A stretch of 64,000 nucleotides of DNA from Heteronotia binoei (Eukaryota): assembly GCF_032191835.1 (NCBI RefSeq), contig NC_083223.1, forward strand, positions 254,448,001-254,512,000. The letters are read 5' to 3'. The translations under genes were made by a program, and so were the position numbers. The notes beneath the pieces are model-generated. The model saw nothing but the letters and a program-made list of their open reading frames with translations. It did no database searches and was not told the DNA's origin. This document shows positions 10,576-44,440 of the stretch, piece by piece (the stretch's first letter is position 1; each line of letters opens with the position of its first letter).

Positions 10576-10851
10576 AAGAAGATATTGGATTTATATACCA
10601 CCCTCCACTCCAAATCTCAGTCTCACAGCGGCTCACAATCTCCTTTACCTTCCTCCCTCACAACAGACACCCTGTGAGGTGGGTGGGGCTGAGAGAACTC
10701 TCACAGCAGCTGCCCTTTCAAGGACAACCTCTGCCAGAGCTATGGCTGACCCTAGGCCATTCCAGCAGGTGCAAGTGGAGGAGTGGGGAATCAAACCTGG
10801 TTCTCTCAGATAAGAGTCCGCACACTTAACCACTACACCAAACTGGCTCTC
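10576..10851 (-). mobile_element. Squam3-like (MIR/Ther1-derived) tRNA SINE
   Basis: GAGAGCCAGTTTGGTGTAGTGGTTAAG..GGTTTGATTCCCCACTCCTCC head; several copies in this window. Confidence 0.75.
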
Positions 10852-11996: not shown

Positions 11997-12468
11997 TAGG
12001 GTTACCAGATCCAGACTGAGGAATCCCTGGAGATTTGTGAATGGAGCCTAGGGAGGATGAGGGGCTAAGTGGGGTACAATGCCATAGAACCCACCCTCCA
12101 AAGCATCTATTTGCTCCAGGGGAACTGATTGGTGTAGTGGTTAAGTGTGCTGACTCTTATCTGGGAGAACCGGGTTTGATTCCCCACGCCTCCACTTGCA
12201 CCTGCTGGAATGGCCTTGGGTCAGCCATCGCTCTGGCAGAGGTTGTCCTTGAAAGGGCAGCTGCTGTGAGAGCTCTCTCAGCCCCACCCACCTCACAGGG
12301 TGTCTGTTGTGGGGGGAGAAGATATGGGAGATTGTAAGCCATTCTGAGTCTCTGATTCAGAGAGAAGGACGGGGTATAAATCTGCAATTCTTCTTCTTCA
12401 TCTCTGCATTCTGATGAGCTGTAATTCCAGGGGATCCCCAGGGCCCACCTGGAGGCTGGCATCCCTAC
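11997..12468. mobile_element. hAT MITE (TAGGGTTGCCA family) interrupted by a Squam3-like SINE (about 12129-12400)
   Basis: TAGGGTTACCA..GGCATCCCTA termini; the MITE body resumes after the SINE. Confidence 0.65.
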
Positions 12469-27012: not shown

Positions 27013-27438
27013 TAGGGTTGCCAGTCTCCAGGTGGGAACAAGAGAGAACTGTGTTCTGCTAAAGAATAAATTAGTTATGTGAAGTTGTTTCTGAACAATG
27101 CTGAAACCCTTTGCAGAATAGTATATTCTGCAAAGGGTTTCAGCATTGTTCAGAAAAAACTTCACATAACTAATTGATTCTTTAGCAGAACACGGTTCTC
27201 TCCTGTTCCTAGCCTGTGTTCGTCCCTCTTGGTTTGCATAGCCTCCAGGTGGGGCCTGGAGATCTCCTGCTTTTACAACTGATCTCCAGCTGGCAGAGAT
27301 CAGCCCCCCTGGAGAAAATGGATGCTTTGAAGGGTGGACTCTATGCCATGCTGAGGCCCCTCCTCTCCCCAAACCCCACCCTCCTGAGTCTACCCCCAAA
27401 GTCTCCAGGTAGTTTTCAACACAAACCTGGCAACCTTA
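27013..27438. mobile_element. hAT MITE carrying an internal 175-bp palindrome
   Basis: TAGGGTTGCCA..TGGCAACCTTA; 8-bp TSD ATTTGTGG. Confidence 0.85.
27035..27209. repeat. Near-perfect palindrome, 86-bp arms, 3-nt loop
   Basis: 27035-27120 against 27124-27209, 4 mismatches. Confidence 0.95.
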
Positions 27439-34800: not shown

Positions 34801-35011
34801 GGGTAGCCGTTTTAGTCTGTCTGTAGCAGTAGAAAAAGTGCAGGACTCCATTAGCACCTTAAAGACTAACAAAATTTTTGGCAGGGTATGAGCTTTCATG
34901 AATCGCTGCTCACTTCTTCAGATAACGTGAGCAGTCACTCACAAAAGCTCATACCCTGGCACAAATTTTGTTAGTCTTTAAGGTGCTACTGGACTCTTGC
35001 TCTTTTCTACT
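34801..35011. mobile_element. Inverted pair of Penelope-like pseudo-LTR fragments (hairpin)
   Basis: Arms about 34828-34913 and 34927-35011; hammerhead core on the minus strand at 34887-34924. Confidence 0.65.
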
Positions 35012-39147: not shown

Positions 39148-39236
39148 TTGTGTTCGTTCAGCTCTATCTCCAGCTCAGCTGCCTTGGAGGCCAGGCTGCG
39201 CTGTTCCTGACGCAGGCGGTTAAATCCAGCCACCAC
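39148..39236 (-). CDS. PFDN2: PFDN2 exon 2 (VVAGFNRLRQEQRSLASKAAELEIELNEH)
   Basis: atag|GTG acceptor, AA|gtatgt donor; 89 nt. Confidence 0.95.
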
Positions 39237-40361
39237 CTATAAGGAGAAAATCAGTTGCAGGCTGAAACACCCTCCTCCACTCCAAGCAGCAACCCAATTT
39301 AATCACACAAGGGCTGGTTTTTTTACATTAGTCCTTTCTGTCCCCCCCCCGCCCCCGTTTCTCTTTCTCCCATCAAACTTCATCTCTGTGTTTTAGCAAC
39401 CGGGCTTAATTGTACTGATATTGCTGATAAGCTTGCTTGACACTGGTGCGAGACTTCCACAACAGCCAAAGAGAAGGATTCGGTTTGTGGGTCCTTGGAA
39501 CAACTGTTCACTGCCTTGTCTCATGGTTCCTTGCCTTTCCCTTCACAATCCACAAAGGGATAACACATTGGACATTTGATGGTTTCAAACACTGACTGCA
39601 TCCACACAGACTCCCCCCCCCCCCCCATTTCCAAACTGCTTTACTTTTGGACCATTCACACAATGTCATTCTATAACTATCTTTTCCCCAGGCATTCTCT
39701 GTCCTCAATATGTTCTTTCTCAAGTTTGATTGGAAGTGATCCAGAAAGAACACCAATCCAAGCATGGTAGCAAGCCATCTGAATGGAGAGGTGTACATTT
39801 TCAAAGGGCTTGTTCACATCAGTGCCATTTTCCCTCCATCAGCCTCAAGTGTTCCATTTTCCCTCCTGCTCCACCAAGGGGTTTTAAAAACAAACTACAA
39901 ATAATTACTACTACTACTACAAATAAATTTTATTTATATCCCGCCCTCCCCGCTGAAGCAGGTTCAGGGCGGCTAACAGGACATGGTATATACCATGATA
40001 TTGTATAAAACAATTATACTATTCCCCCACACAGCAATAACGTGATAATCTAGTGTCACCGTCTACTAGTTCCTCTGAATTCCTTTAATCTTTTATTTTT
40101 AATGAAAACTGTGAACTCAGAAACCCTAGTTGCTCATGGCAACAGATAGTCATGAATTTTTAAAAATCCTCTAGTACCATGGAAGGGAGAAAATGCAGCA
40201 TAAATTGCAGCTGACCAATAAAAGTATGTGCAAAACCCCTGTGTGGATGCTGCAACGTCAGTGTGCAGTGCAGTCATATCCATGAGGAGAGGAAAATAGT
40301 ATTCTTACAGGACAGATGCAGCTCTTGTCAACCATCCAGTTAGCAGACCACACCATTTGAC

Positions 40362-42642
40362 GGGACGTACTAAAACTCGGAACAGCGCCTGCCCATAGAC
40401 TATACACGCCTGCCCATAGGGAATAATGGGGACCACATTTCACCACAGGGAAAAAGAGAAATTCACCTAAGGACACCCCTTTCCCATAGACTACACATGC
40501 CTGCCCATAGAGAAAGCACACCTGCTCATAGGAAATAATGGGGACCACACTAGCCCTTAGAAGAAAATGGAAATTAAGCTTCACCTAAGCATAGCGCCTG
40601 CCCACAGAGAAAGCACACCTGCCCATAGGGAATAATGGGGACCACATTTCACCACAGGAAAAAGGCATATTAAGCTCGGTCTAAGGACACCCCTTGCTCA
40701 TAGACTATACACGCCTGCCCATAGAGAAAGCACACCTGCCCATAGGAAATAATGGGGACCACACTAGCCCTTAGAAGAAAATGGAAATTAAGCTTCACCT
40801 AAGCATAGCGCCTGCCCACAGAGAAAGCACACCTGCCCATAGGGAATAATGGGGACCACATTTCACCACAGGAAAAAGGCATATTAAGCTCGGTCTAAGG
40901 ACACCCCTTGCTCATAGACTATACACGCCTGCCCATAGAGAAAGCACACCTGCCCATAGGAAATAATGGGGACTACATTTCATCATAGAGAAAAAGGGAA
41001 ATTAAGATTTTACTTTCGTCCAAGTTTTCCCTCCTGAGAATTCCTAGGACTTCTTCCATGGGAAGATCAACTGCACGACCTGTCATATATGGATTGTTAA
41101 TTAAGCACTTATCTGTATCATTGCTATCTGTCATGTTGATAATTCAGGGACCACTTCACAGCTCCCTTGGAATCCAAAAATACAATGTCCAGCCAGTAGA
41201 AGGTGCAGAACAGCAAAGTCAAAGGTCATCCACAACTATACATAGTCTGAATATCTGACTGCAAAGGCCAACATGTGCAGAAATGACCTACTCCTAGTCA
41301 GCAGAGAACACAGCAAGCAGAGTTTTCAAAAGAGAAACCTAGAATATAAACTTTAAGTTCCTAATTAGTAGCTAAGCAACAGCACCCCGTACCCCTCTTG
41401 GGTAGTTGCTGGAGACCTTGACCTCTGGCTTCTGCACTGTGATTTATTACTATTGTTCTCCCAACAAGCAGGGCTTTCTGCAGCACTTTTTGGATTTGTT
41501 GGTGTTCTCTATCATGGGAAATAAGCTATTGACTGTTGTGAATTTGGTGATGTTCCCTTATTGAGATTTATTGCTATTTTGACATCGCCCCTCAAAGTAG
41601 AGCAACATCTTCAGTTAACCTCCAGTTTTCCTTAATCTACACTGTGCACTGAACAACAGTGATGTTCACCGAAGAATAAAGAAAGCTGGACTTTCAGATG
41701 GACTCTTGAAATTAGAGGTGCCATGTTGCCCAGTAAGCCGCTCATCTCAATCAGTGCCAGGGTAGCCTGTTAGGCGAACAGGGACAACGGAGAGATATGC
41801 AGGAGAAGAAGAATTGAAGTTGGAGGTGCTGGGAAGGGGAGCCACTCTGTGCCCCACCGCAACTGCCCACAGGAGGTGGTGACAAGAACACTAGCAGAAA
41901 GAACAAAATGGAAAGACAGCAGGGAGGATCTAGGTTGTTGGAATGAAGGAGGAGCTCTTTGTTCCATGCTCAGCGCCATTTAGATAATCACAGATTAGGT
42001 GTTTCCATGTGTGAGTGAGGAGATCAGATATTTTGGTAACATGAACGCCATTATTCCCTCTGGCCAAGCTGGCTCTCCATTATTCCTCATAGGCAAGTGC
42101 ACTTCTAATTCGTCCCTATTGGAGATTATGCATTATCTATTGGAAATCATATATTATGTAAGGGCAATAGCTCTCCATACTGGCCATGTGAGGACTGCAA
42201 TGTTTATAGAGAGAAGCTTTGGACACAACTATACATAGTCTGAATATCTGACTGCAAAGTCAAATGTGTCAAATGTGCTCTCCCTTATTGCCTATTGAAA
42301 AACCTGGTCTAAAGTACTCCCAGAGAAAAAGTAATCTCTATTATATTCCCTATGGGCAGGTGTGCTTTCTCTATAGGCAGATGTGTATAGTCTATGGGCA
42401 AGGGGTGTCCTTAGGCCAAGCTCAATTTCCCTTTTCTCCTATGGTGAAATATAGTCCCCATTATTCCCTATGGGTAGGTGTGCTTTCTCTATGGGCAGGT
42501 GTATATAGTCTATGGGCAGGCACTGTGCTTAGGTGAAGCTTAATTTCCCTTTTCCCTATGGTGAAATGTGGTCCCCATTATTTCCTATGAGCAGGTGTGC
42601 TTTCTCTATGGGCAGGCGCTATTCCAAGTTTTAGTATGTCCC
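40362..42642. mobile_element. Foldback/Mutator-like DNA element with long modular inverted arms
   Basis: 38-bp terminal inverted repeats GGGAC(G/A)TACTAAAACT.. with 3 mismatches; 9-bp TSD CCATTTGAC (40353-40361, 42643-42651); arms built from tandem modules. Confidence 0.8.
40499..40975. repeat. 214-bp higher-order tandem repeat (about 2.2 copies) within the left arm
   Basis: CTGCCCATAGAGAAAGCACACC at 40501, 40715 and 40929; CTAAGCATAGCG at 40585 and 40799. Confidence 0.9.
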
Positions 42643-43549
42643 CCATTTGACAGCAGCAAAATACTCCAAAAACATGAGAAAGATGGAAAGTGTTCCTTAT
42701 TGTTTCATTATGACCAAACCTATTCTCAACTGACCCAAAAGCCAACCCAAGCCTTCCAGCTTCAGAATACTTTCTTTCTACCCTCATCTTCCTCACCATC
42801 TTAAAACCTTACACAGCCTGTTTTGCTATAGATCCCTAGAGTGAGATCTAATTTATTTATTACCTGAAGATACTTATAGTTGCCAGAGATGCTCACTGCT
42901 TTATTATAGCCTGAAAAAAGTACCAGCGACGAGGACTGCTATTTACAAGAGACTCTGGCTTAAATGAAAACTTCTAAGTTTTGCTAACACTCACAGGACC
43001 TCTTTTTTACCTGCATTTAAACTCCCCCAGAAACAGAGAAACAAATAAGCAGCCAAATGTGCTTGCTCAGTGTTAACACAATGTGTTGACGAGTACTTTT
43101 CCGTTCAACACAACCTCATATCTTCCAGAATCATTCAAAATAGATTCAGGCTTACACGTACACACTGCACAGCCCCACTCCTTTTCTCAAAGACCTCACC
43201 TATCCCACGGCTATCCAAAACTGTCTTTCTAAGCCTGCAAACATTCGACCACAATCCCTTCCCCTCGATTTCAAAAGCCCGTCACTGCAGATCGGCCTTG
43301 ATTACATCATGCTCCCACACTCTGCACATGCCCAAAGGAGCTCCCGTCTTTCCTCTGAAGTCACAGCTAAGCAACACTATGGAAGGGTCCGGCTTATATT
43401 GGATCCTGCGTACCATACACAGGGAGTGAGCCGTGATTTACGCCCCGCCCTGCACTTTGTCTATGCCCAGAGGCACGCCACCCCACGGCTTCTCCAAGCT
43501 TGCCTCTCCTTTTGACTCCCCTCCCTCCTTCGCCTGCCCCGTTCAGCAC

Positions 43550-43651
43550 CTGCTCCGCTGTCAGTGGCTTGGCGGCACCTCCGGCTGCAGCACCGCCTCC
43601 CCCACCGGAAGGAGCCGCCGGGCCGCTTTTGCTCTTGCCGCTCTCCGCCAT
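43550..43651 (-). CDS. PFDN2: PFDN2 exon 1 (MAESGKSKSGPAAPSGGGGGAAAGGAAKPLTAEQ)
   Basis: AAGATGGCG start context in a CpG-rich region; CAG|gtgctg donor; in frame with exon 2. Confidence 0.9.
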
Positions 43652-43855: not shown

Positions 43856-44440
43856 ATACGAAAGTTTACAATCTGAATAAAACGTTGCTGGTCTTAAAGG
43901 GGCAACGGGACTCCTACTTTGTTCTACTGCTTCAGACCAACACGGCTGCCCACTTGGATCTATCCCTAGAAGTAGAAAAGAGCAGGAGTCCAGAAGCACC
44001 TTAAAGACTAATACAATTTGCGGCAGGGGAGGGGCTTTCGTGACTCACGGCTGATTTTTTCAGATACAGCTAGAATGTACATTGTAGGATGTAGCTGTAT
44101 CTGAAGAACTGAGCAGTGACTCGCGGAATCTCCTGCCCTGCCACAAATTTTGTTAGTCTTTGAGGTGCTACTGGCCTCTTGCTCTTTTCTACTCTAACAG
44201 GGCTACCCATCTCGAGCTGTCCCTACCCAAATCAAAGGTTTGCTCAATTTGTTAATTTTGCTATTCTGTCATGGGCAAAAACAATTTTGCATTCTACACC
44301 ACTGCCTGCCAGCTGTATGTATTTCAGTTCACTGTACCCCATTCCTGCCTCGTCTGAAGAAGTGTGCATGCACACGAAAGCTTACATTCTGAATAAAACT
44401 TTGTTGGCCTTAAAGGTGCACTGGTCTCCTACTTTGCCCT
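43856..44440. mobile_element. Cluster of Penelope-like pseudo-LTR fragments including an inverted pair (43971-44193)
   Basis: Repeated GCACCTTAAAGAC(T/C)AAC..AGCTTTCGTG motifs in both orientations; hammerhead-like core at 44352-44385. Confidence 0.6.

What the first reader, a model, noticed from the sequence alone, without database searches (positions are those of the whole stretch)
40353..42651. Foldback/Mutator-like transposon with 9-bp TSD and asymmetric modular arms in PFDN2 intron 1
Seen: perfect 9-bp TSD CCATTTGAC; GGG..CCC termini; inverted arms of unequal length (about 640 bp left, about 310 bp right) built from ACACCTGCCCATAG sub-repeats grouped into roughly 100-bp modules and, on the left, an almost exact 214-bp higher-order repeat; about 1.3 kb of non-coding interior. 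Established: 9-bp TSDs with long G-terminated inverted repeats characterise the Mutator/MULE superfamily, and modular unequal arms characterise Foldback elements; few such families are described in amniotes. I do not recognise this family, so it may be undescribed. The arms would pair in PFDN2 pre-mRNA.
Basis: partly seen in the sequence, partly recalled or inferred. Interest (0 to 1): 0.75.

Follow-up and report, generated by a model that had tools for sequence, protein, structure and literature searches.

The report
Foldback-type DNA transposon in gecko PFDN2
A 2.3-kb non-coding cut-and-paste jumping gene with long repeat-built mirror-image ends sits in the first intron of a gecko housekeeping gene; it is real and tidy, but its enzyme family (Mutator-like or Merlin) could not be settled from this single copy.

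Summary
At 40362-42642 there is a 2281-bp element with GGGAC...GTCCC ends (35 of 38 terminal bases match). A perfect 9-bp duplication, CCATTTGAC, flanks it.

- **Arms:** the left arm is about 650 bp and the well-kept right arm about 300 bp. Both are built from an 11-nt core, CCTGCCCATAG (15 and 8 copies), at 21-bp phasing, in 97-117-bp modules. The left arm holds two 214-bp units that are 97.7% identical. Weak arm-like modules at 42048-42186 suggest the right arm was once longer.
- **Interior:** the 1.33-kb interior shows no protein or RNA family match.
- **Host gene:** the element lies in PFDN2 intron 1; PFDN2 is on the minus strand.

It is best read as a non-autonomous Foldback-type terminal-inverted-repeat transposon. 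The Mutator (MULE) call is plausible, at about 0.6. This scan already noted an intact MULE transposase and 9-bp-TSD Foldback elements with 154-bp arms on other DNA of this gecko genome; the present element lacks that unit's GGATCC motif.

Arm pairing in pre-mRNA is predicted only in silico.

The parts
40353..40361 (.). Left copy of the 9-bp target-site duplication, CCATTTGAC
   Evidence: Identical to 42643-42651; the neighbouring bases break the match.
40362..40387 (+). Left terminal 26-nt tip starting GGGAC; non-repeated end of the inverted repeat
   Evidence: Matches the reverse complement of 42617-42642. The terminus is found only at these two sites in the window.
40362..41009 (+). Left arm, about 650 bp. 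It holds 15 copies of the core CCTGCCCATAG in alternating 2-core and 3-core clusters at 21-bp phasing, in modules of 97-117 bp.
40467..40894 (+). Two tandem 214-bp higher-order units (40467-40680 and 40681-40894), 209 of 214 bases identical; a partial third unit follows
   Evidence: family D4; period 214.
41010..42343 (.). Interior of 1334 bp with no recognisable coding or RNA family content
   Evidence: No similarity to the rest of the window.
41231..41266 (+). First copy of a perfect 36-bp direct repeat inside the interior; unexplained
   Evidence: a 46-nt extension at 91% identity (D9).
42224..42259 (+). Second copy of the perfect 36-bp direct repeat
42048..42186 (-). Degenerate arm-like modules in right-arm orientation; probable decayed inner part of the right arm
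   Evidence: 64-71% identity to arm modules, E down to 5e-7; D7, D8, I20.
42344..42642 (-). Right arm, about 300 bp well kept, with 8 cores in clusters of 2, 3 and 3; it ends in GTCCC on the + strand
42643..42651 (.). Right copy of the 9-bp target-site duplication, CCATTTGAC
43550..43651 (-). PFDN2 exon 1 (context): 34 codons from ATG, followed by a GT donor, in a CpG-rich block
39148..39236 (-). PFDN2 exon 2 (context): AG acceptor at 39238-39237; matches Prefoldin_2 profile positions 3-35

Best explanation
This is a non-autonomous class II (cut-and-paste) transposon of Foldback architecture. It most likely belongs to the Mutator-like (MULE) superfamily, and it inserted into intron 1 of PFDN2 in a gecko (Heteronotia binoei according to earlier notes of this scan). 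Inferred mechanism: a transposase supplied in trans binds the 11-nt core, which is repeated every 21 bp (two helical turns) in the subterminal arms. It pairs the two ends, cuts at the GGGAC tips and joins them to a target cut with a 9-bp stagger; repair of that stagger gave the CCATTTGAC duplication. The element encodes nothing itself. The left arm later gained a 214-bp tandem duplication and the inner right arm decayed, which together produce the unequal arms. The sequence shows the anatomy, the TSD and the intronic position. The binding role of the cores, the identity of the transposase and the order of arm changes are inferred.
For: - Perfect 9-bp TSD exactly abutting matched termini.
- 23 copies of one core confined to the arms, with 21-bp phasing.
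- Hierarchical tandem structure of the arms.
- No coding relic in the interior.
- MULEs make 8-11-bp TSDs, commonly 9, and have long TIRs (PMC6446971; PMC5499845).
- The MULE Muta1 has the same plan on a smaller scale: a terminal motif plus phased subterminal repeats, 8-9-bp TSDs, and more repeats strengthen transposase binding (PMC5499845).
- Foldback-like elements with 9-bp TSDs carry MULE transposases in nematodes (PMC3169594).
- Earlier notes of this scan, not tested here, report an intact MULE-DDE/SWIM/Ulp1/PHD transposase between mirrored repeat arrays 4.78 Mb away on the same chromosome, and 9-bp-TSD Foldback elements elsewhere in this genome.
- The insertion lies about 0.9 kb from the 5' CpG island of a gene. 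I recall maize and rice MULEs preferring such sites; that was not checked here, and this is a single data point.
Against: - Only one copy was seen. No family, no second TSD and no empty site could be obtained.
- There is no transposase remnant.
- Merlin fits the same TSD and terminus criteria.
- The arms lack the GGATCC motif reported for the 154-bp Foldback family of this genome. The known intact MULE may therefore not be its partner.
- The interior makes up 58% of the element, more than in classic Foldback elements.
- One survey doubts that MULEs exist in vertebrates at all (PMC6446971).
Confidence: 0.6

Rival explanations
1. A non-autonomous Merlin-superfamily element whose inverted repeats have expanded by tandem duplication.
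For: Merlin elements have 8- or 9-bp TSDs, conserved 5'-GG termini and TIRs of 24-462 bp (PMC8101967). All of these are met here. Merlin is known, patchily, in vertebrates (PMC4350176).
Against: I found no report of modular Foldback-type arms of 300-650 bp with phased sub-repeats in Merlin. No Merlin transposon is noted so far in this genome (absence from notes is weak evidence). A MULE with Foldback arms is noted in it.
Confidence: 0.15
2. A Foldback-like non-autonomous element of another superfamily (hAT, P/Galileo-like or an unclassified one) that gave an atypical 9-bp duplication at this site.
For: Foldback architecture evolved independently in several superfamilies; Galileo, for example, is a P element (PMC3169594; PMC5499845). 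Earlier notes list hAT-ended modular elements in this genome.
Against: The TSD is exactly 9 bp. An 8-bp reading makes the ends unequal. From my own knowledge, not checked here, hAT ends are typically CAG/TAG-like; these ends are GGGAC. hAT TSDs are predominantly 8 bp (PMC5499845).
Confidence: 0.12
3. The element has been taken over by the host as a structured intronic RNA. Its roughly 300-bp imperfect double-stranded hairpin would serve editing, small RNA production or splicing control of PFDN2.
For: In the predicted fold of the sense strand, 283 of the 300 right-arm bases pair with the left arm. MFE is -972 kcal/mol against -656 +/- 6.6 for shuffles.
Against: Any inverted repeat gives this result. 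No RNA run was listed and no conservation data could be obtained. The arms are diverging at 80-90% identity, largely by transitions. That looks like neutral decay.
Confidence: 0.05
4. Not a transposon: a local inverted duplication of a minisatellite, with a chance flanking repeat.
For: Only one copy was seen in 64 kb.
Against: A 9 of 9 flanking repeat lies exactly at the ends of matched, non-repeated 26-nt tips; the chance is about 4e-6. Both arms share the same ordered layout inward from the tip.
Confidence: 0.03

Closest known systems
Muta1 of Aedes aegypti (MULE, 'type 2 foldback')
   Same: A terminal motif is followed by phased subterminal tandem repeats that bind transposase, with 8-9-bp TSDs (PMC5499845).
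   Different: Muta1 is autonomous. Its TIR is 145 bp with nine 12-bp repeats. Here the arms are 300-650 bp with a three-level hierarchy (11-nt core at 21-bp phasing, 97-117-bp modules, 214-bp unit) and there is no gene.
Tm1 Mutator/Foldback family of root-knot nematodes
   Same: Composite inverted repeats of variable length are built from short tandem motifs behind a short unique tip. TSDs are mostly 9 bp. Non-coding members exist, and the two arms of one element are imperfectly identical (PMC3169594).
   Different: Tm1 uses about 14-bp repeats and asymmetric 7-bp tips, and a Phantom-type transposase partner is known. Here the tips are symmetric, the repeats are different and no partner is known.
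Drosophila Foldback (FB) elements
   Same: Long modular arms of unequal length. From my own knowledge, not checked here, FB elements make 9-bp TSDs and their arms have a hierarchy of sub-repeats.
   Different: As I recall, classic FB arms make up nearly the whole element. Here a 1.33-kb unrelated interior makes up 58% of it.
154-bp-satellite Foldback elements and the intact MULE transposase of this same gecko genome (earlier notes s1-322567, s1-340630, s1-340642)
   Same: Same genome, 9-bp TSD, inverted arms made of tandem repeats.
   Different: Those arms are 154-bp units said to contain four GGATCC motifs each (s1-322695). This element has none and has 97-117-bp modules. Shared termini could not be tested.
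Merlin superfamily
   Same: 8-9-bp TSD, 5'-GG ends, TIRs up to 462 bp (PMC8101967).
   Different: I found no report of Foldback-type modular arms in Merlin. The transposase could not be tested.

Membership tests
MULE (Mutator-like) superfamily | TSD of 8-11 bp, commonly 9 | tested here: met
   Exactly 9 bp, perfect. One copy only.
MULE (Mutator-like) superfamily | Long terminal inverted repeats (over 100 bp) | tested here: met
   93 nt at 88% from the tips; up to 256 nt at 82% in other registers.
MULE (Mutator-like) superfamily | Mobilised by a MULE DDE transposase whose autonomous element shares the termini | not testable with these tools
   No relic in the interior. The genome could not be searched. 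The intact MULE noted in this genome could not be read.
Foldback-type elements (structural class) | Arms built of tandem sub-repeats behind a short unique tip, of variable or unequal length | tested here: met
Foldback-type elements (structural class) | Arms make up most of the element, with little or no middle domain | tested here: not met
   The interior of 1334 bp is 58% of the 2281 bp. It falls to about 46% if the decayed modules from 42048 inward are counted as arm.
Merlin superfamily | 8- or 9-bp TSD, 5'-GG termini, TIR of 24-462 bp | tested here: met
   against the criteria in PMC8101967. The arms here are longer than that range if taken whole.
Merlin superfamily | DDE_Tnp_IS1595 transposase partner | not testable with these tools
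   No coding relic; no access to the genome.
hAT superfamily | 8-bp TSD | tested here: not met
   9 bp; an 8-bp reading leaves unequal ends.
P / Galileo-like foldback elements | 7-8-bp TSD (lengths from my own knowledge, not checked here) | tested here: not met
   9 bp.
Any transposon family | Several copies at unrelated sites with the same ends | tested here: inconclusive
   One copy in the 64-kb window. Searches outside the window were blank, closed or cover no vertebrate DNA.

The most novel reading that the evidence does not exclude
This element represents a second Foldback-type MULE lineage in a gecko, distinct from the 154-bp-arm family. [quoted passage not shown]
Probability: 0.4. Interest if true: 0.55.

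Novelty: new member of a known kind. Interest (0 to 1): 0.35.

Why it matters
If the MULE assignment holds, the element adds a distinct non-autonomous family to the very thin record of Mutator/Foldback transposons in amniotes. Its 23 phased copies of one 11-nt core would be an unusually clear set of candidate transposase-binding sites, testable against the intact gecko MULE enzyme noted elsewhere in this genome. For the host it is an ordinary, tolerated intronic insertion. It takes up 53% of PFDN2 intron 1 and is predicted to fold into a long imperfect RNA hairpin. Nothing shows that the hairpin matters.

Tried and rejected
- Other copies in the window: none.
- Word search of the protein collection with a 94-aa stop-free frame of the right arm, hoping to fish pseudo-proteins called on other copies: 1 candidate, none scored.
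- Orthologous PFDN2 loci, to find an empty site.
- The look-up of sequencing runs: none was listed, so read laying could not be used.
- Earlier findings searched by sequence and by relatives: blank.
- Double-core pattern in metagenome contigs: 3 hits, all unrelated short coding-type tandem repeats with no further similarity.
- Terminus and core patterns in viral and prokaryotic genome contigs: 0 hits.
- Full-text search for the terminus and core strings: 0 papers.
- Rfam over the whole intron: 0 matches.
- Pfam on all interior frames of 45 aa or more at E up to 10: only chance-level hits.
- An 8-bp or 10-bp TSD reading: rejected from the junction bases.
- The large HMMER protein search, the protein atlas and the structure tools were not used. 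The element has no credible protein and the operators flagged the cost.
No contig taken for human was fetched or compared.
Full report
**1. Observation**

- CCATTTGAC stands at 40353-40361 and again at 42643-42651. The bases just outside and inside each copy break the match, so the duplication is exactly 9 bp.
- Between the two copies lies a 2281-bp element (40362-42642) that starts GGGAC and ends GTCCC.
- The first 38 nt of the two ends, read inward, agree at 35 positions. The three differences are transitions, two of them at CpG.
- The 21-nt terminus, allowing 3 mismatches, occurs only at these two places in the 64-kb window, with none expected by chance.
- A 9 of 9 flanking match at a fixed junction has a chance of about 4e-6. 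Together with the matched ends, this is an insertion footprint and not a coincidence.

**2. Anatomy of the arms**

Behind a 26-nt non-repeated tip, both arms carry clusters of an 11-nt core, CCTGCCCATAG. Cores within a cluster are spaced 21 bp apart.
- Reading inward, the left arm (40362 to about 41009) has clusters of 2, 3, 2, 3, 2 and 3 cores, 15 in all.
- The right arm (42344-42642) has clusters of 2, 3 and 3 cores, 8 in all.
- Each cluster is followed by a shared motif of about 17 nt and a spacer of about 50 nt. This gives modules of 97-117 bp.
- One 2-core module plus one 3-core module form a 214-bp unit. TRF reports period 214 x 2.8 copies at 94% on the left and period 118 x 2.3 copies at 88% on the right.
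- The two full left units (40467-40680 and 40681-40894) differ at only 5 of 214 positions.
- The two arms aligned in register are about 90% identical over the first 110 nt and 80% over 300 nt, with 35 transitions and 22 transversions.
- The 14-nt form of the core with at most one mismatch occurs 10 times, all inside the element, against 0.03 expected.

**3. A refinement of the asymmetry**

A sensitive comparison finds weak arm-like modules, in right-arm orientation, at 42048-42186 and 42268-42295. They are 64-82% identical to arm modules, with a best E-value of 5e-7 in a very small database (also D7, D8 and I20). The right arm was therefore probably close to 600 bp once. The present inequality seems to come from decay of its inner part plus a young 214-bp tandem duplication on the left.

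**4. Interior**

The interior, 41010-42343 (1334 bp), has no stop-free frame longer than 89 aa.
- Every frame of 45 aa or more was scanned against Pfam at E up to 10. Only chance-level hits appeared, and none was to a transposase, zinc-finger or protease family.
- Rfam found nothing in the whole intron.
- The element has no similarity to anything else in the window.
- A perfect 36-bp direct repeat (41231-41266 and 42224-42259) stands out against the 10-20% divergence of the other repeats. I cannot explain it.

**5. Host context**

PFDN2 lies on the minus strand.
- Exon 1 is at 43550-43651: 34 codons from ATG, then a GT donor, in a CpG-rich block.
- Exon 2 is at 39148-39236, after an AG acceptor.
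- Exons 2, 3 and 4 match the Prefoldin_2 profile at positions 3-35, 30-74 and 73-105, in order.
- Intron 1 is therefore 39237-43549. The element with one TSD copy fills 53% of it and ends 0.9 kb from exon 1.
- Earlier notes of this scan name the genome as Bynoe's gecko, Heteronotia binoei.

**6. What it is**

Three features define a non-autonomous terminal-inverted-repeat DNA transposon of Foldback architecture:
- a TSD abutting matched tips;
- subterminal arms made of phased copies of one short core;
- no gene.

The closest worked example is the mosquito MULE Muta1. It has a terminal motif plus nine phased 12-bp subterminal repeats and 8-9-bp TSDs, and its authors call it a type 2 foldback element. 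In that system, more subterminal repeats strengthen transposase binding, and excision goes through hairpins on the flanking DNA (PMC5499845).

By analogy, I infer that the 23 cores here are transposase-binding sites. The 21-bp spacing would place them on one face of the helix. This is inference and has not been shown.

**7. Which superfamily**

- *For MULE:*
  - MULEs make 8-11-bp TSDs and have long TIRs (PMC6446971).
  - Foldback-like elements with mostly 9-bp TSDs carry MULE transposases in nematodes (PMC3169594).
  - Earlier notes of this scan report, in this same genome, an intact MULE-DDE/SWIM/Ulp1/PHD transposase between mirrored repeat arrays 4.78 Mb from this window. They also report several 9-bp-TSD Foldback elements with 154-bp arms. 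I could not test these notes. They raised my odds for MULE from about 45% to about 60%.
- *Against a simple link to that family:* the 154-bp unit is said to hold four GGATCC motifs. This element has none, and its module sizes differ. It is a different family and may need a different enzyme.
- *Foldback architecture is not diagnostic either:* it has arisen in both the MULE and the P superfamilies (PMC3169594, PMC5499845).
- *Poor fits:* hAT, whose TSDs are predominantly 8 bp (PMC5499845), and P (7-8 bp, from my own knowledge).

**8. RNA pairing**

The sense (minus) strand of the element was folded whole.
- The MFE is -972 kcal/mol against -656 +/- 6.6 for eight mononucleotide shuffles.
- 283 of the 300 right-arm bases pair with the left arm, in uninterrupted helices of up to 42 bp. 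The extra left-arm units loop out.
- So the arms would pair if the intron is transcribed as one molecule. Any inverted repeat would give this result, and no RNA data could be obtained.

**9. What could not be done**

The PFDN2 loci of other geckos, found through the exon-4 search, could therefore not be fetched for an empty-site test.
- A word search with an arm frame was blank.
- Pattern scans of metagenome, viral and prokaryote collections gave only three unrelated hits.
- The literature holds no paper with the terminus or core strings.
- Copy number, the TSD length in other copies, the autonomous partner, the age of the insertion and catalogue status all remain open.

**10. Novelty and score**

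- The record for such elements in amniotes is thin. A comparison of 23 vertebrate genomes detected MuDR only in human (PMC4350176).
- A eukaryote-wide MULE survey found limited evidence for MULEs in chordates and asked whether they are really absent from vertebrates (PMC6446971).
- This scan has already reported Foldback/MULE elements and an intact transposase on other DNA of this genome. The present finding adds one more, distinct, non-coding family known from a single copy and with an unproven superfamily.
- I rate it a new member of a known kind, with interest 0.35.

Noticed in passing
window 41231-41266 and 42224-42259: A perfect 36-bp direct repeat lies 993 bp apart inside the element's interior. 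The element's other repeats are 10-20% diverged. It may be a recent internal duplication, gene conversion or a template-switch scar.
   Followed up: partly
window 42048-42186 and 42268-42295: Degenerate arm-like modules lie inside the 'interior', in right-arm orientation. They suggest the right arm was once about as long as the left.
   Followed up: partly
window 43971-44193 and 34834-35011: Two copies of a near-palindromic element of about 180-220 bp whose ends begin AGTAGAAAAGAGCA. One lies about 320 bp beyond the PFDN2 start codon, on the promoter side; the other lies about 1.1 kb beyond the PFDN2 stop codon. The ends resemble the AGTAGT-ended miniature foldback noted elsewhere in this genome (s1-323885).
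   Followed up: no
window 27035-27209: A hairpin element with 86-nt arms, 95% complementary and 3 nt apart. It lies just beside the KLHDC9 / V-ATPase head-to-head region that another note flagged.
   Followed up: no
window 10588-10841 and 12129-12382: A 254-nt inverted pair (89% complementary) 1.3 kb apart inside the V-ATPase A paralogue gene. It is probably two copies of one interspersed repeat in opposite orientation.
   Followed up: no
protein search: No PFDN2 protein identical to this window's exon 4 was listed. The best match is 98% identical, on a 4.1-kb Logan contig. The nearest named gecko protein, Sphaerodactylus townsendi, is 93% identical.
   Followed up: no
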